From: Vitrella brassicaformis CCMP3155
Taxonomy: Eukaryota; Protista; Chromerida
Assembly: GCA_001179505.1 (NCBI GenBank)
Contig: CDMY01000248.1
Coordinates: 1-64,000 of the forward strand
DNA length: 64,000 bases
Direction of reading: 5' to 3'
Shown here: in pieces, positions 26,136-42,900 of the stretch
Numbering within the stretch: position 1 is the stretch's first letter
How the letters are laid out: every line of letters starts with the position of its first letter
Program-made: the position numbers and the translations under genes
Notes under the pieces: generated by a model
Told to the model about the DNA's origin: nothing
What the model saw: only the letters and a program-made list of their open reading frames with translations
Database searches by the model: none

Positions 26136-27436
26136 TCACAGATGTGGCACACAGACACGAACGATGCCTTCTGTGTCAATCTGTGTCTCCCGTTTTCTTG
26201 TCCTGAAACCGCGGCATACACGAGTGTAAGCCGTCTTCAACAGGTGGGCCATGTCGATCTCACACTCCTGCCCCGAGGCTAGCGACGACACGAAAACACC
26301 GTGGTTGACGAGGGCGTCGCGATACTGCTTGTCCTCCTCGTCAGTTGCCGCTGGATCGGCGTAGATCAATAGTTCCTTGAAGAGCCGAATACTTGTTCGC
26401 TTCATGAGTTCGAAGAAGCTTTATCTGTGCGTATAGAGATGAGACATGACAAGAATTCGATGACAATCCTTTCCATCGGACATACTTGGACGTTTCTGAG
26501 TGTCCGCGTGGTGCTCTTGTGTCCGAGTGGGCAGGTTGGGNNNNNNNNNNNNNNNNNNNNNNNNNNNNNNNNNNNNNNNNNNNNNNNNNNNNNNNNNNNN
26601 NNNNNNNNNNNNNNNNNNNNNNNNNNNNNNNNNNNNNNNNNNNNNNNNNNNNNNNNNNNNNNNNNNNNNNNNNNNNNNNNNNNNNNNNNNNNNNNNNNNN
26701 NNNNNNNNNNNNNNNNNNNNNNNNNNNNNNNNNNNNNNNNNNNNNNNNNNNNNNNNNNNNNNNNNNNNNNNNNNNNNNNNNNNNNNNNNNNNNNNNNNNN
26801 NNNNNNNNNNNNNNNNNNNNNNNNNNNNNNNNNNNNNNNNGGGGGGGGGGGGGGGGTTGGCTGACTGTGGTGTGGGTGGTCTGGGCGGTAACGGCGTCGA
26901 TGAATCTTCGCAGAAGTTGATGAGTTGCCTGGCTTGACGCTGCTCTCTCGCCGATAGCACATGCGAGCCAAGTGTAATGTGAGGAGCCTCCTTGGCAATC
27001 TCGGCCGCCTGATCGATAGGGGATTCCCACCTTGATCTCATAGATTGCTCATCGTGACCCAGGGAGTTCAGGATCCGAATGGCGTTTTCAGCACATAGAG
27101 GGGGCGGGGACAGAATCCCGTCCTTCTTCATGAGGTCCGCCCGGTGGCTGCGGCAACTGATAGATGCAGGGCCCTGACGTGACTTCGCCTCCCTCGCCTC
27201 GAATCTCTGACACCTGCACCATACACACAAATGTTCGTGGACATTCCTGAATAACCGCTTACGTACCATCGTTGATAATTGTTCAACGCTACGAGGAAGC
27301 ATTGTGCTCGATACGGCAACCGCGACTGTCTGTCCGCACGGTGGAGGGGCGGGCGAAGGACAAGGACGAGTGCTGTCCCGAGAAGCTGCCTTGTATGGGG
27401 GCGGGAGGGATTGCGGCCGGATTCAAATATAGCCAA
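26136..27436 (-). CDS. Hypothetical multi-exon protein spanning an assembly gap
   Basis: Coding-like segments MKKDGILSPPPLCAENAIRILNSLGHDEQSMRS, AAEIAKEAPHITLGSHVLSAREQRQARQLINFCED and FELMKRTSIRLFKELLIYADPAATDEEDKQYRDALVNHGVFVSSL with plausible splice sites; no family recognised; start uncertain. Confidence 0.4.
26541..26840. other. Assembly gap (300 N)
   Basis: Run of N followed by poly-G. Confidence 1.
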
Positions 27437-30500: not shown

Positions 30501-33500
30501 CCTCGGGCTCGGTGGTCGCGTCGGCCCATAGAGGCTCCTCGGTCTTCTTGGAATCTCTGACGGAAGCGGAGGAGACACAAACATATCACCTTAGTCGACA
30601 TGACCTTCCATAGCAGCTGACCTTCCATAGCAGACCTCAACCAAAGGCTGTGACTGTGGTGTGACCACGGAGCTGTGAAGGCGAACACCTGAAAGGCACA
30701 CCCAGACGCAGTTGGAATATGTGCTCATGCATCTCTCAGTCGGCTCACCCATGACAAAGAGGTCCACAGTGCAGAATTTGCTGCGCGGGCTGATGTCGGC
30801 GCAAAATGGGTAGCTGTCGATCTCCTTCTTGGGCACCAGCTCAAATGAACACAGTATCTTGGCCCTGATTGCTTGAGTTTGTTCACCCTCGATGTCGAAC
30901 CTAAACATGTAATGCCGAGAAACGTACACGGACACACACATCTCGGCGCTTAAAACGGAGCCGTCACGGGCAGACCATTTTGGATCGTCCAGCCACTCCT
31001 TCGGGATCTTGTTTAAGGGATATCGCAGCGACCCCAGCAGCTCATCGCTCCCAATCCAGTCGCAGTCATAGACTTCCAGCAGCAGGTCGGGGGCGAGGGC
31101 CAAATTCTCGGGCAGTGACAGCTCGAACTCTAGCGCCTCAAACCAGCACGGCATGAGTGCCTGCTTGATGACTTTCGTCATGCGAGACTCCCCAGCGAGG
31201 GAAACCTTGACATATGGGTCCGACAGACCGTCCACATCAGAGATGGGGAGGTTCACAGCTTGATATAGAAAAGTCCTGGACAGTTGCAAGGAAGGAAATC
31301 GCCTCGACACTGCTGATCCTAGCTACGTAGAACCGACGAACCTGCAAACATAGCGTGATAGACGGTACTCCATTCGTGGCTTCCGTGGCCGGGCAGCAAT
31401 CTGCAACCGCAGTACATACCGTCAGCCTTTCGTCGACTGACCGCACACACGTACCTGGCTGGCCGGAATGCATATGCACGAGGCAAGAAGGAAGCCGCCC
31501 GTCTTCTGCACGTCGTCTGTGGTGCTCCGCACAGGCTTGAGTGAATACCATCTCGGCTTGAAGTTGGCCTGCATCATCTGTCGGACCGGCAGCGTCACGT
31601 ACGCCGTCTCCTCCGACTGAAGGCCCCAAATGCCCTGACGAATGGAAACAAGAGAGAAGAGAGCGAGTAAAAAGCATGAAGACATGAGACAAGGGCTGGT
31701 CGATCGAGCACCTTTGTGTATAGATTGATGATGAGATCATAGGACATTGAGGGCTCGGGGAGAAAGAGCTTCTCGGCTTCCATGCGACCCTGAGACGGCG
31801 AACAACTGACGTCAACCATAGTCAGTCACAACTGGATGTGCTGACTTACGTCTTTGTCTTTGAATATGAATGCACCCGATCGCTCCTTCAAAGCCGGCAG
31901 ACGAATCACCTTCGGCCCTATCTGAACCTCGACCTGCACAAACATTCATGCACAGAACCTGAAGAATGCAAGACAGCCTCATTTTCTCTCCATACCTGCA
32001 CTTCGGTGGGCAGGTTCCCCCCCACGGCCACCCCCGAGACCTCATACAAGTCCACCCACAGCTCGTATTCCTGCAGCTCGGGCTCCGTCACTGGCGCACA
32101 CTTCACCACCTCAGCTGGACAGTACAGTAAACAAGTCAAGAAGAGGATCCAGCCGAAATTCTCGGCACGGTGTTGGCCTCACGTGTCGGGCTGGCCATCT
32201 TTTGGACCGATGCTGATATTAGGATTCTCCCGCCGTAGCTTGTAGGCTCCCTCCGAGCCGCGCTCATCATGCCGGCAACCTTCCTGACACAGGACAAGGG
32301 TGATTGCCCAAGACGGGCAGGCCGGCACTTGCCTCTACTTGAGGAAGCCTTCGGCCGGCGGGTGCCAGTAGAAGTTGACCCATCGCGGCTCCAAAGCCTG
32401 TTTTACTATCTCCGAGAAGCTGCGGGCAAGACGGAGCACAAACACAGCATTACATGGTGTCTGGGCTATGGATACGAACAAACGAATGAGAGTACCCGAG
32501 AGTTGTCTTTCCGATCAGGTTATGCTTGCCTGACTCCTCAAAATCCCACACTTCGACCTGGATGGTGTTCTCCATACACGGCACCACCTGATACGGAGGA
32601 ATAGGACGGCTTGGCATGCGATGGTCTTTTTGTGACAGTGTGTCTCATATGGCGGCCCTCACTCACGGCTGGCAGCTTGATGGTCTGATTGAAGTTGGGA
32701 TGCTGAGTATTGCGAAACACCTCCGTCGACAGGTTGACACCCAGGAAGCGAACCGTCACGAAAGGGTCCCAATACTGATGCTTTGCTTCACGGCGCCGCT
32801 CATCACTAGCCATCCAGGCAATGTCCTGACCTCTGCAAGCAACAACAGAATGTTCTTCGTTGCGTCTCTCGGTTTGTCTGACCGTCATACTTGTGTACAT
32901 TGACGCACAGGTGGTAATACGTCATTCTCAGCTCTGGCGTGGCCAGCACTCGGTCCATCATCGACTTGCCCGAGTCGTCTTCCATCTCGCCCGCCTCGTC
33001 CGTCGGCATCTGATCGCCTGGGCCAAACACACCTGCACCAAGACGCCCATGCAGAGGCATGGCAACATCTGTGTTGTGTGAGTAGAGCTACCGAGAGACA
33101 CTTTGAGGAATCCCTTCGGCTCTGACGGTCTGTCGGGCTGGGCGAGAGCAACCCATTGCCGCGACAGGAAGTGCTCGTTCTGCCTGTAGATCATTTCATA
33201 CGAAAAGCTGTACCTGCACCAGCACGACAGAAAGCCACAGAACCATACATACCCTCCATTCCCCTTCCCGTCTCAGCCAGCGCCTACATGCCGATCATCT
33301 CCTGTTTGAAGAAGGTGGCGTGAAGCACCTTGATCTCGATGCCAGGCCGCTGGAACTCCGCCCGATCCAGCGACACATTACTAAACAGAAATGTCTGCTG
33401 GAAAGGACACGACGCCGTTGACTTCTTCCGAGGCGTGGCCCGCGTCTCCCCTGCAGGACAGGTGTGAGTCAATAAGCATTGCAGTGGCATCTCTGCAGTG

Positions 33501-33645
33501 CAGTGTCTGTCTCACCGGCCACAGTGACCTCCACCATTGGGTTCGGCATCTCCGAGCGGGCCACATTGCTGCGCTTGGGCGTCCATCGTAGATCCTGGAC
33601 CTCGAATATCTCCACCTTCACGACATAGTCCAGCCTCTTCGCCAT
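27598..33645 (-). CDS. Ferlin-family multi-C2-domain membrane protein
   Basis: C2 domains: MAKRLDYVVKVEIFEVQDL...PNPMVEVTV; DPFVTVRFLG...VFRNTQHPNFNQTIKLP; LYQAVNLPISDVDGLSDPYVKVSL...PCWFEALEF...LLLEVYDCDWIGSDELLG. Ferlin signatures FLSRQWVAL...KGFLKVSL, IGRTLIDLEDRWF, FQIRIVVWKC, DQDTDTHWNSQ|DGTATFNWRFVF, PVGKGREEPN. Hydrophobic C-terminus, stop at 27598. Confidence 0.92.
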
Positions 33646-33768
33646 CACGCTGAGGGCAAAAGGGCGAAGCGGAGAGAAGAAGAAAGAGGCGGAGGAGATC
33701 TAGTGGAGACCAAAGATGACGACGAGCACTGCAAAAAGAGAGGAAAAGGGGGGGGGACGTCTGCAAGA

Positions 33769-33791
33769 TTAGCTCGCAGTTTGAGCTCGCA
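33769..33791 (+). promoter_or_regulatory. Tandem pair of AGCTCGCA in the ferlin/F-box-ATPase divergent spacer
   Basis: ttagctcgca at 33769-33778 and tgagctcgca(aatg) at 33782-33791. Confidence 0.5.
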
Positions 33792-33885
33792 AATGACGGG
33801 AGGCGGGGATGAGCTACGTCATTGTGTCCTGGAGCGTACGTCTAGCATAGCGCAGCCTTTGTGACGCCTTCCGTAGAATCGCAGG

Positions 33886-36499
33886 ATGCCGCGGGTCTTT
33901 CTGGACCTCAGCGATGATGTTTGGCACTACATCATCGGCACACGGCTCATGGACTACGCCGAGGTGATGCCGCTGAGGTCCTCATGCCACACAGTCCTCT
34001 CGCTGGTCGACCACGGAGCTCAACAGGCCCTCCACCGACTCACGAGGCTGCAAGACTGGGCATGGCTCAACCTGGTGCGTGTGCGTAGGCCAAGGAGACC
34101 ACAACAGCACTGAATCATTCTCCCTACTGTGTGCTGCTCTGCTGCTACAGGTTCACGTATCGCCGCTGCAGCGGTTGTTGATCGAGGACACGCTTCGCAA
34201 GAGGAAGCTGCGGCTTGCCGAGCTGTCGCTGGAGAACTGCCTGTGCTTCTTCAAGGAGCGCATCCTCTTCTCCCCCAACCTCAACGTGATCCGCGGCGGC
34301 AACGGGACGGGCAAGACGTCCATCATCCTCACCATATCCACGGCTCTGCAGGTCATGGAGGACATGCCGTCATTCGCCGTCCTCAGGTACGGCCGTGCCC
34401 ACCAGACCAGACACACAATCGGAATAATCACCGCTGCAGGCCTTTCTGTTTGTATACCTTGTGTGTGGACTCAGGTCTGGTGCCCAGTCCGGCAGCATCA
34501 CGATCCGCTTCGCCCCTGCAGCCGACATGTCCGGTCACCGCTTCTCCCTCTCCCTCACCGTGCAGCTGACGAGCACCCGCCCCTTCCTCACCCGACAGCT
34601 GGCAGTCAACCTGGGCCAGGGCGCAACACGACTTAAGCGCGTGGCCAACGGCTCGTCGCTTCCGCAGTCGGTGCCGCTGGACCGAGTGGTGATATCCACG
34701 GTGGACGCGGACATCCAGAAATGGCTCAGCCTGCTGGGCACGGACGGGTGGAGGAACCTGATACGACACCAGTGGTCGACCAACATCCCCCGCACATTCT
34801 TCGGGGCGACCCAGCTGATCAACCAGAGCGCCCCGCCGCCCCCACCGCCACCCAGCCTCTCCCCCCCTTCTGCCCCGTCCTCTGCACCCGCCCCCCCACC
34901 CGTCCCCTCCCTCCCCCTCCCCCCCATGCGCAAGGGGCGCATGAGTGACGAGGCACTCAGATGCCATCGTGACCACCAGTCAACCCAGGTGGCGTCGCGG
35001 AACATGGAGGCGCTCAATGCGCTCGTCACCAGCTACCGGGCCAAGATGCAGGCACAGCGCGACAACTCGCCCTCCCACAAACAGCCCCATGCAGACGGAG
35101 TCCTGCGTCCCCACCCACCCTCGCCGTCATCCGCGTCTGCCAGTGCGTCGTCGGCTCGCCCATTCTCGTCCCTCTCGTTGGCCGAGAGGCTCAAGACGGG
35201 AGCAAGCCCCATAGCAGCTGGCGACGCGCCGTTGGTGCCCTTCATGGGCAGCGGGCTGGGCCCTGGCGACCTGGGAGTGGCGGGCATTCCGTCATTCAAG
35301 GTGTCGGTCGAGGGCGAGGAGGAGGGGGGTGATGGCAGGGGCGGCGCTGGGGGTGGACGTGGTGGTCAGCATCTGCGGTTTGAGTATCGGCCGAGCGGGG
35401 GGATGCGATACCGGCCTGTTGAATATCGGACCACAGCGGGTGAGTGAGTGGGACCAAACACAGGACAGGACGGTGGAATGAATGGCTTGTGGCAGGACCG
35501 CTGATTGATTCCTTCTGTGTGCGTTCTTGGTTTGTTGTAGGTTCGTCCCCTGAGATGGAGGTGTTGTTGCGAATCCTGCTGTATCTCAACGAAGCTGACT
35601 CGCCCTTCCTGGTAAGGGAAGGAACTGTGGCCGACGAACGCCACAGGGTGTCCACTCCCTCTGTCCTGTCTTGTCTGTGTCTGCAATCCAGGCATTTGAT
35701 GAGTTGATGGGTTTCAACCTGGAGGACGCGTGCGACGCTGAAGCACGGCGGAATCTCCACCCTCTGCAGCGGACGTTCTCAGATCTGCTGTACCTGGCGC
35801 TTCTGCACTGCCTCGCCAGGGGCCGACAGGTCAGTACACGAACACGTGAATGTGTGGATATGTGAGTGTGGCCATCCGTTATTTTGTGCTGTCATCCCTC
35901 CCTCAGATCATCTGGACGACCGTCCGCCATGAGCGTGTCATCGGGGCGTGGCTGCGGCGTCTCGCCAAAGACCTCAAGCCCCTCCCGACGCCTCCATCCA
36001 CACCACCAACAGACGACAAGGCCACATCCACACGCAGCCTGGTGCCTCAGATGCCCATGCCATTCCGCCCGTCGCCCGGTCTGTCGCTGGCTGTGTCGCT
36101 GCATGGTGAGACGGGGGTGGGCGATGAGAGCCCGGTGGTGTTGGCCAAGAAGCTGACCGACATAGTGCTCAAGGGAGACAAGGGCGATGAGAGGCCGTCC
36201 GCCGCTGCCGCTGCTGCTGCTGGTACTGCAGAGGGAGACAAGAAGGACATTGGCGAGGATGCGGATGCGTTTATGTGCACGAGAGAGATGGAGGTGAGGA
36301 GGCCGGAGACGACACATCCATTGTAATGCATTGCGTGCTGGCGTCATATGGATGGATGGATGGATGTTTTGATGTGATGGGGGTGTGCGCGCAGGTGAAC
36401 ATGATAGAGCTGGAGTCTCGTGGGTACGCCGCGCCCCACAACCCGCCGCCATACAGCATCAAGACAGCCAGGGCCAGATTCAACCAGCTCCTGCTGTAG
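33886..36499 (+). CDS. F-box-like N-terminus fused to an SMC/RecF/Rad50-type ABC-ATPase head without a long coiled coil
   Basis: Exon 1: FLDLSDDVWHYIIGTRLMDYAEVMPLRSSCH (F-box-like). Exon 2: LAELSLENCLCFFKERILFSPNLNVIRGGNGTGKTSII (SMC_N strand + Walker A). Later exons: AG|SSPEMEVLLRILLYLNEADSPFL|AFDE (degenerate signature + Walker B) and Q|IIWTTVRHE (H-loop-like). Splice phases at these junctions were checked; stop at 36499. Confidence 0.75.
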
Positions 36500-37707
36500 T
36501 GGACGACACAAAACAAGGGGGCGGGGCGGGGCACTCACTGCGGCGTGTCGCTCACTAGGTGTGTAGGCCATAGGCATGTGTCTGAGTGTGACGGCGGGAT
36601 GGATGGATGGTGTGGTAAAGATGCGTGTGTGCTGAGAGGAGCAGTCCAAACGAGGTGGGTGGGCGGGCAGATGGATGTGCTGCTGGCCCTAGCTGCCATA
36701 CTGTCTTCTTGTCCAGCAACTCTGTTAGGCCTGGTCGTCTGAGCACGCACGAGTGACTGCTGTGATGACGGTCTCGCTTTGTCTCGATGGCGCGTGGGTG
36801 GGATATTGCGTCGCGACTGACATTTTTTGCTTCCTTTTGCCTCTCTCTTGCTGCTAGGTGGTTGCTCTCCGCGCTGTTGGGCGGTGGCTGTAGTCAGGGG
36901 GCGGAAAACTATGGATGAGAGACGCCAAGAACCGACGTCCTCTCATCCATAGGCTTCCTCTTCCGGACGCCAGCGATCGCTGGAAGCGCGAGGAGAGCAA
37001 GGAAAGAATGCACCCGCCTGTGGGCGAAATGGCTGTCCAGTGTTGTTGATGGTGTGGTACCTGCCCCTTGTTCTCGGTGAGGCAGCAGCACGATACCCAC
37101 AAGAGGTTGTGATGACTGCCACAACCTCTTGTCGGTGTCGTGTCGCTGGCCAGCAACCTTGGATGAGGGGAAGTGGACCTACCTCGTGTGTGTAAGTAAT
37201 GAGTACACGTGTATCCATCCTATCTATGCATCCGGCGTGTAAGTTTGTGTGTGTACAAGTGCCTCGACCGGCCTAGACCGATGGGCTTGATTTTTCACCT
37301 GCTGCTGACTGACTGAGAGAGAGAGGTTACCGATACGGCGACGGTCCCTCCAGTGACGATCGGTCGCTCGCGGGACACCCACACACGTGCAGGTGCCAGG
37401 CAGGTGTAGCGTAATTCGTTTGTTGCTGGCTGTGATGCGTACGTAGGCAGTGGATAACTTAGTTAAGAAGAAAGAAGGGGACGGGGGGAAGGGGGAGGGG
37501 GAGGATGGCGCCGCCACGCTGTACCTTAGCTGTCTATCCTTGAGCCGTCGTGGCCAATGAGTGATATATGCCGTCCTTCTCCTCCCCTCTCCCCACCTCC
37601 CCCCGACCACCTACCTAGTATCGTCTCTCTGGTTGTCGCCGATCTTGTCTTGTGTAAGTACTGTATTTTTCATCGCGACAGACGGAGAGAGACAGAGAAA
37701 AGGGTCG

Positions 37708-38897: not shown

Positions 38898-39756
38898 CTA
38901 CGATGCGAAGAACTCGTCGAAGTTGATGAGCCCGTCGCCGTCCTTGTCCGCCAAATGGATCAACTCATCCACCTCGTCTGGTATGCACCACAAACCAACC
39001 GACAGTTGTATACATTCGGCGACGATGGATGTGTGTATCTGTGCTTCCATCTCGTCTCGTCGTTTTCGCTGTGTGGAGTCAATCAATTCACCTTGTGTGA
39101 GTGGATTGCGTCCGAGGGTCGTGAGCAGATGCCGCAGCTCAGGCGGCGATATGAAACCGTTCCTGCAGGACACCGCCGCACACAACACAAACAGAGCGGC
39201 CCCCTCCTCTCCCTCCCTCCCTCCCCTCGGTTTGGCCCGTGTGTGTCTGTGTGTCTGTGTATGGGATGACAATGCGCCTGACTGACTTGTCCTTGTCGAT
39301 GAGTTGGAATGCCTGGAGTACGTCGTCTTCGCTCTCGAGTCCCAGCATCTTCCTCTTCATGGCGTTGAAGAACTCCTCATAGTCCAACTCACGGTCACCA
39401 TTCTCATCCAAATCTGCCGACCGACCGACCGACCGCACAGAGAGAGGCGTGGCACGTGTAGTGTGCAGGCACGTGTGTCTGTGTGTACCGTCTACGATTT
39501 GCGCGATTTCTTCTGGGCTCACGTTGTCCCCCTCGAGGGCCTTCTTCATGGCCTTCTCCATCTCCGGGAGGGACAGCTTCCCATCCTTGCTCGTGTCGTA
39601 GTGGTCGAACACCGCCTTTATCTCCTTCTTCTGCAACGCATACGCACACACACACAGACGGGCGGCAACACTTGCACACCCACGCCCCTCCCCGGACAGA
39701 AGCCCCCTCACCTGCTTGTCGGTGAGCTCCTTGCGATTCAATAAGCCCGTGTCCAT
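38898..39756 (-). CDS. Calmodulin/centrin-like protein with four EF-hands
   Basis: Spliced product MDTGLLNRKELTDKQ|KKEIKAVFDHY-DTSKDGKLSLPE...DENGDRELDYEE-FFNAMKRKM...VLQAFQLI-DKDK|NGFISPPE-LRHLLTTLG...DEVDELIHLA-DKDGDGLINFDE-FFAS*; all four loops keep Glu12. Confidence 0.9.
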
Positions 39757-39978
39757 CGTCTCCCGTACGATTCTAACAGCAAATCCACACCGAATTCTCC
39801 GTAAAACCTTCACGGTTGCGGCCAGGGTTGTTTCCGGGCCAGATCTTGATCTTGGCCTTTTTCCTCTCATCGCTGGCGCCGTTTTCTCGCGTTCCCATGA
39901 CGGTGCTCGGCCACCGCAGCACGGCAACACCAACATAAATAAGTCGCTCGGCCACGTGGGCACAGGAAGCATCAGATC

Positions 39979-42900
39979 ATGAGCGACGGTGCGGCCGTCC
40001 GAGAGGCCTGGGGTGAGGGTAGGGGTGGCGATGGAGGTTCGCCCAAGGGTGCGAATGGGATATGGCAGTCCCCGCAGTGCCCCATACTCCAGCAGGCCGT
40101 CGTCAAGCTCACGGGTGAGAACCGAACACAACACACAGGCAGGGGACAGAGGGAGGGAGGGAGAACGGCGTCCGTCCGTCCGTCCATCCATCCATGTATG
40201 TATCCATGCTGTTTGCCGCAGAGGATCTTCGGTTGTGTCGTCACGAGTTGGGATGTAGCAAGCGAGAAGTGCAGGTGGGCCCAACACACCCACACACACG
40301 ACGCACCCTCCTTCAAAAGTATCTGATGGATATGCCTCCCGCTCTCCACCGCACCGCAGGCCATCACGCGTCAGCTCCGCGATGCCGAGCACCAGATTAA
40401 GGAGCTCAAAGCCAGACTCGTAGAAGAACGGGTGGGTACACGAACCATCCACACACGCCCACAGCCGCAAACCACCCCCTCCCCCCNNNNNNNNNNNNNN
40501 NNNNNNNNNNNNNNNNNNNNNNNNNNNNNNNNNNNNNNNNNNNNNNNNNNNNNNNNNNNNNNNNNNNNNNNNNNNNNNNNNNNNNNNNNNNNNNNNNNNN
40601 NNNNNNNNNNNNNNNNNNNNNNNNNNNNNNNNNNNNNNNNNNNNNNNNNNNNNNNNNNNNNNNNNNNNNNNNNNNNNNNNNNNNNNNNNNNNNNNNNNNN
40701 NNNNNNNNNNNNNNNNNNNNNNNNNNNNNNNNNNNNNNNNNNNNNNNNNNNNNNNNNNNNNNNNNNNNNNNNNNNNNNNNNNNNNNCCCCTCCCCCCTCC
40801 CCTCCTCTGTGTTCTTTCTTTCTGTCAGGAGCGGTCGTCAGCGTTGGAGCGCGCGAGCACCCGCCGCACCACCTCCTACCGCCGGCTGCCATCCGACCTG
40901 CTGGACAAGGCCGGCGGGCCCGTATTAGCTGACCGTGTGTCGTCCCACCCATGCCCCACCAGCATGGACGCGCCACCATACGTGGGCGGAAACGGCCTCC
41001 AGGTGAGGGCCTTGGGCGGCCATCCCGACCGGCCCCCGCGTGTTGGGGGTCATCGTGCGACGCCCAGGGAGGGCAGGCGGGGCGGGGGAGAGGGAGAGGG
41101 AGACGATCGCAATAGACTCCATTCTCTGCTGTCTGAGGTGGGTACGGACACGTGAAAATGCTGGTGTGGGGTGGTGGAACCATGCCATGAGTTGAGTTGG
41201 TCCTGTGTTTGTGCGTTGTGTGTTGTGTGCAGCACTATGACAAGGACACCTTGGAGAAGTAAGTTGGAGGGCGGAGGGAAAAGGAAATGAAAGGACTTAC
41301 ACGCCTTAAGGCCTTCGTGGAAGCTTTTTGGTTTCTGACAGGTTGATGATGGAGCGTGAGACTGCAGAGGATGTCCGCCAGGTCCGCCGCGAATAGAAAA
41401 AAGACCCCCCCATATCCCACATCCCAGCCACCCATTCACTTTTCCCTTTCTCCATTCCTCAGACCATCCAGGCCCTCGAGCGGATGCACCAGACCACCAC
41501 CACCACCACACACGAGCCTGACGGCTCCATCATCAGCCTGAGACCGCAATACGACAACCCCTTCTCAGTCCACCCACCCCACCTGCCACCCAAACCACCC
41601 AAGACGCAGATTCAGACGCAGCAGCAGCAGCAGCAGCACCAGCACGGCACGCGCACATCCCTGCCGCAGTCGCCCCCAGTAGACCAAGACGAAGAGGATG
41701 CGCACCCGCCACCAGTCATCCCCTTCCGACCTCGCGAGTCCGTGAATGGTGCTACTGGTGTTGGTGGGAGTGTGTTGGCGGAGGGGAGTGTGGGAAATGG
41801 CATGGTGGTGCCGCCCAGCAACATCCCGAGGAAGGTGCCCAAGGGCGGGGTCAACCAGATGTCGACCATCCGCCGCAACGGGTCGCCCACGTCGGCCATT
41901 CCCCCCTGCAAGAGGGCCACTGCGACCACCGCACGGCCGCTCAAAGGCATCCCCGGACAGCCACAGCCACACCAGCAGCAGCAGCAGCAGCAGCAACAGA
42001 CGAACGGTGCGGCTGCAGGGGCGCCATCCATTTTGTCAGAACAGCATCCTCCGGTTACCGTCACTGCCAAGGCCGACAGCGCCATCGCTGGGTCGCGGAC
42101 GCCGCCCTTCGTTCCCATGTCGATGCACCCCAACAAGCGAGACATGGAGAGAGGCACCCGCCCCGCAATCTTCTACTCGCCCGGGGGCAAGGTGCTCCAG
42201 CCACACGGCCAGTCGGCAGAGCTGGGGCCGAAGGAGCGGGGACCTCTGGCCAACCTCGTGCTGCCGCCCTCCGTCTTTCCCCCTGACCAGACCAGCAATG
42301 GTGAGGTGACGGACGTGGCCCCCGCTCAGCGCGTCGACCTCTCCAAGGCGCTCACAGAGCGAGACACACACACCCAAGCGCAGCCCCAGCAGCTGTCGCC
42401 AGTGAAGGAGGGCGCCACGATTCGCGAGAGCAAGACGGCCAAGAAGGAGAGGGAGGGGTGGCGCGGCCGGCCGGCGTCATCTCGCGACGTGCTGGAGGGG
42501 GCAAGAGTGGGTGTGGGTGTGGGTGTGGGTGTGGGCGGGGGTGATAGTCGGCTGTCGGGTGTAGCTACTACAGCTGAGGAGACCGGTGCTGGTGTTGGTG
42601 TTGGTGGTGTAGCTGGTGTGTGTGAGAGGGCTCACGTGGACTACAACGTGATAGAGCCGCATGAGAGGGGTGTGGAGCAGCGGTATGTGAGCACGCAGCA
42701 CGAGACCCTGGAGCCGCGCAACCCGCCTCTGCATGACAAGGGTCAGCCAGCCACATTATATAATGGGGCCCTCTCCTTTGTGCCTGCAGGACCTCTTGCT
42801 TGTGTTGTTCTGTGGCTGTCTGTCTGTCTGCCGTCTGTCAGAGCGTGTCAAGAAGATCTGTGACAGCGTCGACTGGCATGTGCAGGCGCAATCCTTCCTT

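What the first reader, a model, noticed from the sequence alone, without database searches (positions are those of the whole stretch)
33886..36499. F-box fused to a 'mini-SMC' ABC-ATPase head with no long coiled coil
Seen: exon 1 is F-box-like. Exon 2 is a typical SMC/RecF/Rad50 N-terminus (LxLxLENxxxF...FSPNLNVIxGxNGTGKTSI). The C-terminal exons supply Walker B (PFL|AFDE) and an H-loop-like QIIWTTVRH. The LSGGE signature is degenerate (AGSSPE). The two half-heads are separated by a few hundred residues, much of it Pro/Ser-rich, rather than the coiled coil plus hinge or zinc hook of SMC/Rad50 proteins. Established: F-boxes recruit substrates to SCF ligases via Skp1, and SMC-type heads bind ATP/DNA as dimers. 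Inference: this could be an SCF adaptor using an ATPase head (possibly binding but poorly hydrolysing ATP) as its substrate or nucleotide sensor. I know of no described protein with this architecture.
Basis: partly seen in the sequence, partly recalled or inferred. Interest (0 to 1): 0.75.

Follow-up and report, generated by a model that had tools for sequence, protein, structure and literature searches.

The report
Orphan algal ATPase with possible F-box
A single-copy gene of the alga Vitrella brassicaformis encodes a compact relative of the SMC/Rad50/RecF DNA-ATPase "head" with a weakly F-box-like start; the ATPase front half is certain, but the rear half and the ubiquitin-ligase link are only suggested, so the fusion is a candidate, not a discovery.

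Summary
The gene is real as modelled. All introns are GT-AG and all exons show coding GC3. No RNA check was possible.

Confirmed:
- Residues 83-131 are a genuine SMC/Rad50/RecF/PtuA-type strand-strand-Walker A start (Pfam AAA_23, E 3e-9, above cut-off).
- There is no long coiled coil. The roughly 180-residue spacer is mostly Pro/Ser/Gly-rich, with one predicted helix of about 40 residues.

Only suggested:
- F-box: no Pfam hit. The exon is absent from the 55 F-box matches in this genome. hhalign against 20 Vitrella F-boxes gives P 0.003, in register (0 of 300 shuffles reach it). Eight of ten ESM Atlas structural neighbours are F-box proteins.
- C-lobe: the motifs SSPE, FLAFDE and QIIWTTVRH are present in the right order, and ESM features and fold point to ABC C-lobes. 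Every profile test I ran was non-significant.

No relative was found at any significant level, and the gene has no paralogue. Compact heads without coiled coils are normal in bacteria (PtuA, RecF), so "mini-SMC" alone is not new. An F-box on such a head would be new. The closest known analogue is the F-box helicase FBH1. Interest is moderate.

The parts
33886..34074 (+). Exon 1, residues 1-63: N-terminal helical extension with weak F-box similarity (res 5-44)
   Evidence: No Pfam F-box hit. hhalign vs 20 Vitrella F-boxes gives score 17.6, P 0.0027, with 0/300 shuffles reaching it. ESM Atlas structural neighbours are 8/10 F-box. GC3 is 0.79.
34151..34386 (+). Exon 2, residues 64-142: linker helix with a basic patch (RKRK, res 79-82), then strand-strand-Walker A-helix of an SMC/Rad50/RecF/PtuA-type ABC head
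   Evidence: AAA_23 E 2.8e-9, above cut-off. PtuA, Rad50 and RecF models hit the same 45 residues. hhalign vs a PtuA profile gives prob 96.8% for res 83-131.
34295..34321 (+). Walker A / P-loop, G112-S120 (GGNGTGKTS)
   Evidence: Read directly from the sequence. These are invariant columns in alignment A4.
34475..34820 (+). First part of exon 3, residues 143-257: presumed remainder of the N-lobe, ending in a candidate Q-loop (GATQ, res 253-256)
   Evidence: tblastn alignments to compact bacterial/archaeal AAA ATPases reach about res 232 at 25-30% identity, E 0.02-2. The MAFFT column with the family's LPxxAYYGxGR block includes P247. Not significant by hhalign.
34821..35366 (+). Middle of exon 3, residues 258-439: Pro/Ser/Gly-rich low-complexity spacer with one predicted helix (res 300-339, nt 34947-35066); no long coiled coil, hinge or zinc hook
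   Evidence: Sequence. Both AF2 runs predict only this one helix. phmmer of exon 3 vs 1.8 billion representatives found only itself.
35367..35611 (+). End of exon 3 plus exon 4 (intron 35440-35540 excluded), residues 440-487: predicted strands, an out-of-register PSGG (448-451), SSPE at the signature-motif position (465-468), a helix (467-481) and the start of the Walker B strand
   Evidence: Motifs read from the sequence. ESM features score 0.90 to AAA_21/RecF-SMC fragments, and fold neighbours are ABC/SMC6/RecN. AF2 with a PtuA MSA gives pLDDT 53-69 here. No profile support.
35692..35829 (+). Exon 5, residues 488-533: end of the candidate Walker B (FLAFDE, 486-491), an extended D-loop region, NLHP (508-511) and a helix
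   Evidence: Sequence. MAFFT against 21 PtuA proteins instead aligns FNLEDA (495-500) and NLHP with the family's VLIDE..HLHP, so the register is ambiguous.
35907..36293 (+). Exon 6, residues 534-662: QIIWTTVRH strand / H-loop-like motif (nt 35904-35933 including the last codon of exon 5), then a low-complexity tail
   Evidence: Sequence. It resembles the family block QFIxTTHSP, but His lies two residues after the canonical position. No family hit for the tail.
36395..36499 (+). Exon 7, residues 663-696 and the TAG stop
   Evidence: Sequence; the model equals P0001.

Best explanation
This is a real, single-copy gene restricted to the Vitrella lineage. It encodes a compact ABC-type ATPase head of the SMC/Rad50/RecF/PtuA superfamily. 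The N-lobe (res 83 to about 257) carries an intact Walker A. The C-lobe (about 440-545) is probable but strongly diverged. It has a canonical-looking Walker B (FLAFDE), a degenerate signature motif (SSPE instead of SGGE/Q) and a displaced H-loop histidine. The two lobes are joined by about 180 residues of low-complexity spacer rather than a coiled coil. The first ~45 residues most likely form a divergent F-box. The working model is therefore an SCF substrate receptor whose 'substrate side' is an ATP-binding head that hydrolyses poorly. Nucleotide, DNA or partner binding to the head would decide what is brought to Skp1-Cul1. Shown here: the gene model matches the public annotation, and the N-lobe belongs to the superfamily. 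Inferred: the C-lobe fold, nucleotide binding, the F-box, and any link to Skp1.
For: Gene: the exon model equals the 696-aa protein P0001. Splice sites are canonical and every exon has coding GC3. A divergent C2-domain gene starts about 240 bp upstream, so ATG 33886 is the natural first coding exon, and exon 2 has no in-frame ATG before the P-loop. N-lobe: AAA_23 above cut-off, hhalign prob 96.8%, and tblastn alignments reaching about res 232. C-lobe: the motif order SSPE - helix - FLAFDE - helix - QIIWTTVRH has SMC-like spacing. ESM Atlas features for res 440-600 are nearest to AAA_21/RecF-RecN-SMC C-terminal fragments (0.90). Eight of ten fold neighbours are ABC-type ATPases, including SMC6 and RecN. 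F-box: hhalign of 20 Vitrella F-boxes aligns res 5-44 in register, P 0.0027, with 0/300 shuffles reaching it. The opening LSDDV matches the ISDDV of a Vitrella F-box that passes Pfam cut-offs. ESM fold neighbours of res 1-85 are 8/10 F-box families, and the top feature hit is an F-box cluster at 0.86. Skp1 genes are present in the genome. Alveolate F-boxes are reported to be hard to detect by sequence (PMC11570480). FBH1 is a precedent for an F-box fused to a DNA-repair-type P-loop motor (PMC2294136, PMC12946210).
Against: There is no Pfam or NCBIfam F-box hit at E<=10, and exon 1 is absent from the 53-55 F-box matches in the genome. A Vitrella F-box HMM scores exon 1 at only 6.8 bits, 4th of 1017 window ORF segments. 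The Leu-Pro and Trp hallmarks are missing. For the C-lobe there is no Pfam, PADLOC or PDB hit for res 440-600. hhalign against C-lobe profiles does no better than shuffles. HMMER with a PtuA HMM sees only res 83-132. The collinear block test gives z 1.1. The Walker B register is ambiguous: FLAFDE versus MAFFT's FNLEDA, which would lack the catalytic Glu. AF2 without an alignment gave a useless model (pLDDT 38). AF2 with a PtuA alignment gave pLDDT 41, and its PtuA matches are circular. With no orthologue or paralogue there is no conservation evidence. There is no transcript evidence.
Confidence: 0.42

Rival explanations
1. The same compact ABC-type head protein, but the N-terminal 80 residues are only a helical extension (a dimerisation, localisation or regulatory segment) and not an F-box. 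The protein would then act alone or with unknown partners as a nucleotide-binding, possibly DNA-binding, head with no link to SCF.
For: No curated F-box model matches. Exon 1 is not among the genome's F-box matches. Three random ORF segments in the window score as well with the Vitrella F-box HMM. hhalign probability is only 11%. ESM scores below 0.9 are leads only, and TM values near 0.5 mean little for short helical stretches.
Against: The weak match is full-length and in register, at the position where F-boxes sit. It exceeds 300 shuffles. The structural neighbours are almost all F-box proteins rather than a mix of helical folds.
Confidence: 0.35
2. A decaying relic. Only the ~50-residue P-loop start of an ancestral SMC/Rad50/PtuA-like gene is still recognisable. 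The rest is fast-evolving, largely disordered sequence that no longer forms an ABC head, and the 'Walker B' and 'H-loop' are chance motifs. The gene may be non-functional, or it may do something unrelated to ATP hydrolysis.
For: All profile hits stop at about residue 132. The rest of the N-lobe and the C-lobe are non-significant in hhalign and block tests. About half the protein is low complexity. It is an orphan with no detectable relatives. I estimate from general residue frequencies that an hhhhDE string has roughly a 5% chance of occurring in a protein of this size.
Against: The reading frame is intact over seven exons, with canonical splice sites and strong coding GC3. ESM features and fold for res 440-600 point specifically to ABC C-lobe fragments. 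The motifs occur in the right order and spacing relative to one another.
Confidence: 0.15
3. A gene-model artefact. Exon 1 is not part of this transcript, or the transcript differs from the annotation, so the F-box-like stretch and the head are not in one protein.
For: No RNA evidence could be obtained. The public model is an automatic annotation.
Against: Exon 2 has no in-frame ATG ahead of the head, so an upstream coding exon is needed. Exon 1 is the only candidate in the ~500 bp between the divergent upstream gene and exon 2. It joins in phase 0 through a GT-AG intron of typical length and has GC3 0.79. My independent hand model equals the public one.
Confidence: 0.06

Closest known systems
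PtuA (Septu / retron type I-A effector ATPase) and similar compact AAA_15/AAA_21/AAA_23 ABC ATPases of bacteria and archaea
   Same: Both have an N-terminal strand-strand-Walker A block (33-56% identity over ~47 residues; BLASTP 32-41 bits). Both are compact heads without a long coiled coil. There are collinear look-alike motifs: LN at the end of the post-signature helix, LHP after Walker B, and Q-h-I-x-T-T before the H-loop. The best-matching prokaryotic proteins I retrieved were all PtuA by PADLOC.
   Different: Only the first ~48 of 436 profile positions match, and Vitrella's own SMC/Rad50 genes score as well or better with the same PtuA model. The rest is not significantly similar. There is no HNH partner gene. 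This protein has introns, a low-complexity spacer in place of the helical insertion domain, an N-terminal extension and a degenerate signature motif. The PtuA set was retrieved through a P-loop word (NGTGKTSI), so its apparent closeness is biased.
Eukaryotic SMC1-6 and Rad50
   Same: They share the same superfamily head start (SMC5 is the best PDB sequence hit, E 0.004; AAA_23/SMC_N). The spacing from the signature position through the helix to Walker B is like that of SMCs (inference).
   Different: There is no coiled-coil arm, hinge or zinc hook. The lobes lie 1.3 kb apart in the genome, against 6-8 kb in Vitrella's SMC genes. Similarity to Vitrella's own SMC/Rad50 N-termini is only 19-27 bits, and they are not detected as paralogues.
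RecF
   Same: RecF is a small SMC-like head in which a short insert, not long arms, separates the lobes. The RecF model gives a weak hit on the P-loop block (TIGR00611, E 8e-6).
   Different: The score is 25 bits against a cut-off of 172. RecF has a structured clamp domain where this protein has low-complexity sequence. RecF is bacterial.
FBH1 / Fbh1 (F-box DNA helicase)
   Same: It is the only well-known case of an F-box fused to a DNA-metabolism P-loop motor, and it works as an SCF ligase (PMC2294136, PMC12946210). It is the best functional analogy if the F-box here is real.
   Different: The motor in FBH1 is a UvrD-type SF1 helicase, not an ABC head. FBH1's F-box is readily detected. There is no homology to this protein.

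Membership tests
F-box (PF00646 / PF12937) | Match to the curated profile at or above the gathering score | tested here: not met
   No hit at E<=10 for exon 1 or residues 1-90. Exon 1 is not among the 53 and 55 six-frame matches in the genome.
F-box (PF00646 / PF12937) | About 45-residue three-helix motif with the conserved hydrophobic pattern, usually near the N-terminus | tested here: inconclusive
   hhalign vs 20 Vitrella F-boxes covers res 5-44 in register with P 0.0027 and prob 11%; 0/300 shuffles reach it. The HMMER rank is 4/1017. ESM fold neighbours are 8/10 F-box at TM 0.47-0.56. Leu-Pro is replaced by Leu-Ser and the Trp is absent.
F-box (PF00646 / PF12937) | Binds Skp1 | not testable with these tools
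   Skp1 genes exist in the genome. No complex prediction or experiment was available.
SMC/Rad50/RecF-type ABC ATPase head (AAA_23, SMC_N) | N-terminal strand-strand-Walker A-helix block | tested here: met
   AAA_23 at 38.3 bits vs a cut-off of 27. GGNGTGKTS lies at res 112-120.
SMC/Rad50/RecF-type ABC ATPase head (AAA_23, SMC_N) | Walker B (four hydrophobic residues then D-E) in a C-terminal lobe | tested here: inconclusive
   FLAFDE is present at 486-491, but no profile supports it and MAFFT prefers FNLEDA at 495-500.
SMC/Rad50/RecF-type ABC ATPase head (AAA_23, SMC_N) | Signature motif LSGGQ/E at the N-terminus of the helix preceding Walker B | tested here: not met
   SSPE occupies the positional equivalent (465-468). 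A PSGG string lies 16 residues upstream, out of register.
SMC/Rad50/RecF-type ABC ATPase head (AAA_23, SMC_N) | The C-lobe folds back onto the Walker A lobe | tested here: inconclusive
   ESM Atlas fold neighbours of res 440-600 are ABC, SMC6 and RecN at TM 0.35-0.42. AF2 models have pLDDT 38 and 41, and the second is biased by its PtuA alignment.
SMC proper / Rad50 proper | Long antiparallel coiled coil with a hinge or zinc hook between the head halves | tested here: not met
   There are about 180 residues between the lobes, mostly Pro/Ser/Gly-rich, with one predicted 40-residue helix.
PtuA (Septu) | Full-length match to PtuA models and an adjacent PtuB HNH nuclease gene | tested here: not met
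   PADLOC and NCBIfam PtuA hits cover only ~48-90 residues (36.5 bits vs cut-off 500). The same model hits Vitrella SMC genes equally well. The neighbours are C2-domain and EF-hand genes.
RecF | Match to TIGR00611 at its cut-off | tested here: not met
   25.2 bits vs a cut-off of 172.

The most novel reading that the evidence does not exclude
A working SCF ubiquitin-ligase receptor in a eukaryote whose substrate-side module is a compact ABC ATPase head of the prokaryotic type (PtuA/RecF-like, no coiled coil). In effect, a bacterial-style nucleotide- or DNA-sensing head would have its nuclease partner replaced by an F-box, so that ATP-gated head engagement controls ubiquitination.
Probability: 0.25. 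Interest if true: 0.7.

Novelty: new variant of a known kind. Interest (0 to 1): 0.4.

Why it matters
If the F-box and the head are both functional, this would be the first F-box receptor built on an ABC/SMC-type head. It would be a second example, after the helicase FBH1, of SCF ligases recruiting a DNA-metabolism motor. It could also be a case of a prokaryote-style compact ATPase being rewired into eukaryotic ubiquitin signalling in the closest photosynthetic relatives of apicomplexan parasites. Its weight is limited because it is a single orphan gene in one species, with no conservation, no expression data here, and only weak support for both flanking modules. The public databases already flag the AAA domain automatically.

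Tried and rejected
- Word searches for relatives with exon 3, residues 1-262 and residues 64-262 found only the protein itself.
- The exhaustive phmmer search of exon 3 found only itself plus two low-complexity hits.
- The look-up of encoding contigs found no record.
- The search for related loci with the N-lobe found nothing.
- AF2 on the single sequence gave pLDDT 38 and was unusable.
- AF2 with a 21-sequence PtuA alignment gave pLDDT 41. Its Foldseek hits to PtuA (TM 0.3-0.43) are circular, and I give them no weight.
- hhalign of the C-lobe against three different profiles was non-significant: a mixed Rad50/PtuA set, 4 PtuA and 25 PtuA.
- HMMER with a PtuA-family HMM matched only residues 83-132.
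- hhalign of residues 133-262 was non-significant.
- A collinear PSSM block-chain test gave z 1.1, and its best chain was not the expected one.
- A weak own-genome hit of the C-lobe on contig C408 turned out to be a RAP-domain-like ORF, so it is a chance match.
- I rejected 'PtuA is the closest family' as a firm claim. The PtuA model hits Vitrella SMC genes equally well, and my PtuA sample was fished out with a P-loop word.
Full report
**What is there.** The window comes from a 72.7-Mb, 1064-contig genome, identified as Vitrella brassicaformis CCMP3155 through the protein record. Reading 33400-37000 and the ORF table, I derived seven exons by hand: 33886-34074, 34151-34386, 34475-35439, 35541-35611, 35692-35829, 35907-36293 and 36395-36499. 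All six introns are GT-AG and 76-101 nt long. An exhaustive phmmer search with exon 3 returned a 696-aa protein, P0001, with exon 3 at residues 143-463. It is CEL96873.1 / UniProt A0A0G4EIP1, automatically named 'Rad50/SbcC-type AAA domain-containing protein', and it is a singleton cluster.

**Compliance with the operators' note.** All searches of the spliced product used exons by reference or the database protein id. In one search a script concatenated the exon coordinates only to return a true/false comparison with P0001; the joined string was not printed, saved or searched.

**Coding status.** Every exon has GC3 of 0.72-0.91, against intron GC of 0.49-0.57. A divergent gene with a C2 domain lies upstream on the minus strand (C2 at 30591-31310). 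Its likely first coding ORF ends at 33648, leaving about 240 bp between the two starts. Exon 2 has no in-frame ATG before the P-loop, so exon 1 is the natural start.

**N-lobe.** Exon 2 matches AAA_23 (38.3 bits, E 2.8e-9, cut-off 27). Weaker hits to AAA_15, SMC_N, MukB, Rad50, RecF, TrlF and PtuA models all fall on the same ~45 residues: strand, strand, Walker A (GGNGTGKTS, res 112-120) and helix. The best PDB sequence hits are SMC5 (E 0.004) and retron/Septu PtuA (E 0.02-0.07). tblastn against plasmids gave weak alignments (E 0.02-2, 25-30% identity) reaching about residue 232. The targets were compact 'AAA family ATPases': PtuA next to HNH nucleases, and small Rad50-like genes next to metallophosphoesterases.

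A pattern search of prokaryotic genomes found 33 loci. The 21 full-length ORFs I took from them (414-478 aa) are all PtuA by PADLOC and AAA_15/21/23 by Pfam. A 25-sequence profile of them matches residues 83-131 at 96.8% probability. This does not place the gene in the PtuA family:
- The same PtuA model hits the N-termini of Vitrella's canonical SMC/Rad50 genes equally well or better.
- My PtuA set was retrieved with the word NGTGKTSI, so it is a biased sample.
- Residues 133-262 are not significantly similar to the profile.

What can be said is that the gene is not a recent copy of a Vitrella SMC. BLASTP gives 19-27 bits against them, compared with 32-41 bits against compact prokaryotic heads, and no paralogue is found.

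**C-lobe.** SSPE (465-468) caps a predicted helix (467-481). FLAFDE (486-491) is a textbook Walker B. QIIWTTVRH (533-541) resembles the strand plus H-loop, with His two residues late. The spacing from SSPE to D490 is close to that of Vitrella SMC C-terminal halves (inference).

ESM Atlas features for residues 440-600 are nearest to short AAA_21 and RecF/RecN/SMC C-terminal fragments, with a score of 0.90. Eight of the ten fold neighbours of the Atlas model are ABC-type ATPases, including SMC6 and RecN, at TM 0.35-0.42.

Against this, every profile test was negative:
- No Pfam, PADLOC or PDB hit.
- Three hhalign tests no better than shuffles.
- HMMER silent beyond residue 132.
- A collinear block test at z 1.1.

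MAFFT against PtuA offers a second register: PSGG as signature, FNLEDA as Walker B, and NLHP matching HLHP. That register would lack the catalytic Glu. I prefer FLAFDE on structural grounds, because it gives a hydrophobic strand and because SSPE N-caps the helix, but this is inference. Neither AF2 run was informative: pLDDT 38 without an alignment, and pLDDT 41 with the PtuA alignment, whose PtuA Foldseek hits are circular. I rate the C-lobe as probable, about three in four, but not shown.

**Spacer.** Residues 258-439 are Pro/Ser/Gly-rich with one predicted helix (300-339). There is no coiled-coil arm, hinge or zinc hook.

**F-box.** No curated model matches exon 1, and exon 1 is not among the 53-55 F-box matches in the genome. 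I built a profile from 20 Vitrella F-boxes.
- hhalign aligns residues 5-44 over the whole F-box in register, with score 17.6, P 0.0027 and probability 11%.
- None of 300 shuffles reaches that score (mean 9.0, sd 1.9, max 17.1), and no other 90-residue window of the protein exceeds 12.6.
- HMMER with the same profile gives only 6.8 bits, ranking exon 1 4th of 1017 ORF segments in the window.
- The opening LSDDV mirrors the ISDDV of a Vitrella F-box that passes both Pfam cut-offs.
- ESM Atlas fold neighbours of residues 1-85 are F-box families in 8 of 10 rows (TM 0.47-0.56), and the top feature hit is an F-box cluster at 0.86, below the tool's 0.9 line.
- Skp1 is present in the genome.
- A 2024 study notes that alveolate F-box proteins are hard to detect from sequence (PMC11570480).

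I put the F-box at roughly even odds.

**Relatives and literature.** Nothing related was found at any significant level:
- exon 3 against 1.8 billion representatives;
- three word searches;
- the own genome;
- prokaryotic genomes with the whole N-lobe.

One limitation is that the N- and C-terminal parts were searched only among proteins of 383-1218 aa. Literature searches found nothing on F-box plus SMC-like or AAA_23 proteins. A review of homologies between bacterial defence and eukaryotic immunity mentions Septu without a eukaryotic counterpart. The nearest functional precedent is FBH1, an F-box UvrD-type helicase that acts as an SCF ligase.

**Verdict.** I file the gene as a new variant of a known kind: a compact SMC/Rad50/RecF/PtuA-superfamily head in a eukaryote, with a possible F-box. 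It is not a member of SMC proper, Rad50, RecF or PtuA, because defining features of each were tested and not met. I did not test any connection.

Noticed in passing
window 30591-33648 (-): Divergently oriented upstream gene with a C2 domain (Pfam C2, E 3e-16, at 30591-31310). An ORF starting at 33648 looks like its first coding exon, about 240 bp from the start codon of the gene studied, so the two may share a bidirectional promoter.
   Followed up: partly
window 39139-40470 (-): Downstream gene with EF-hand motifs (EF-hand_7, E 6.5e-12). The long ORF reads through what are probably introns.
   Followed up: partly
window about 26540-26860 and about 40500-40800: Runs of N (assembly gaps or masked stretches) show up as X runs in the ORF translations.
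   Followed up: no
window 41484-42863 (+): A 459-aa ORF rich in Gln/Pro/Gly-Val repeats with no Pfam hit; it is either a low-complexity gene or a chance ORF.
   Followed up: partly
window 36345-36366 and 36598-36612: Short (GGAT)n microsatellite-like runs in intron 6 and in the 3' flank of the gene.
   Followed up: no
L038 2501-3697 and L041 2501-5176 (plasmid loci): Halophilic archaeal plasmids carry AAA_23-type ATPases directly downstream of metallophosphoesterase genes (an Mre11/SbcD-like pairing). The Halobacterium copy is only 398 aa, shows no Walker B, and sits next to IS elements, so it is possibly truncated.
   Followed up: no
G000 contigs C463, C117, C221, C372, C570, C298: The canonical SMC/Rad50 genes of the genome have N- and C-terminal head halves 6-8 kb apart where both halves were found (C221, C570, C298). 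A PADLOC PtuA model hits the N-termini of C463, C117, C221 and C372 as strongly as, or more strongly than, the gene studied. This warns against reading PtuA hits on ~48 residues as family membership.
   Followed up: partly
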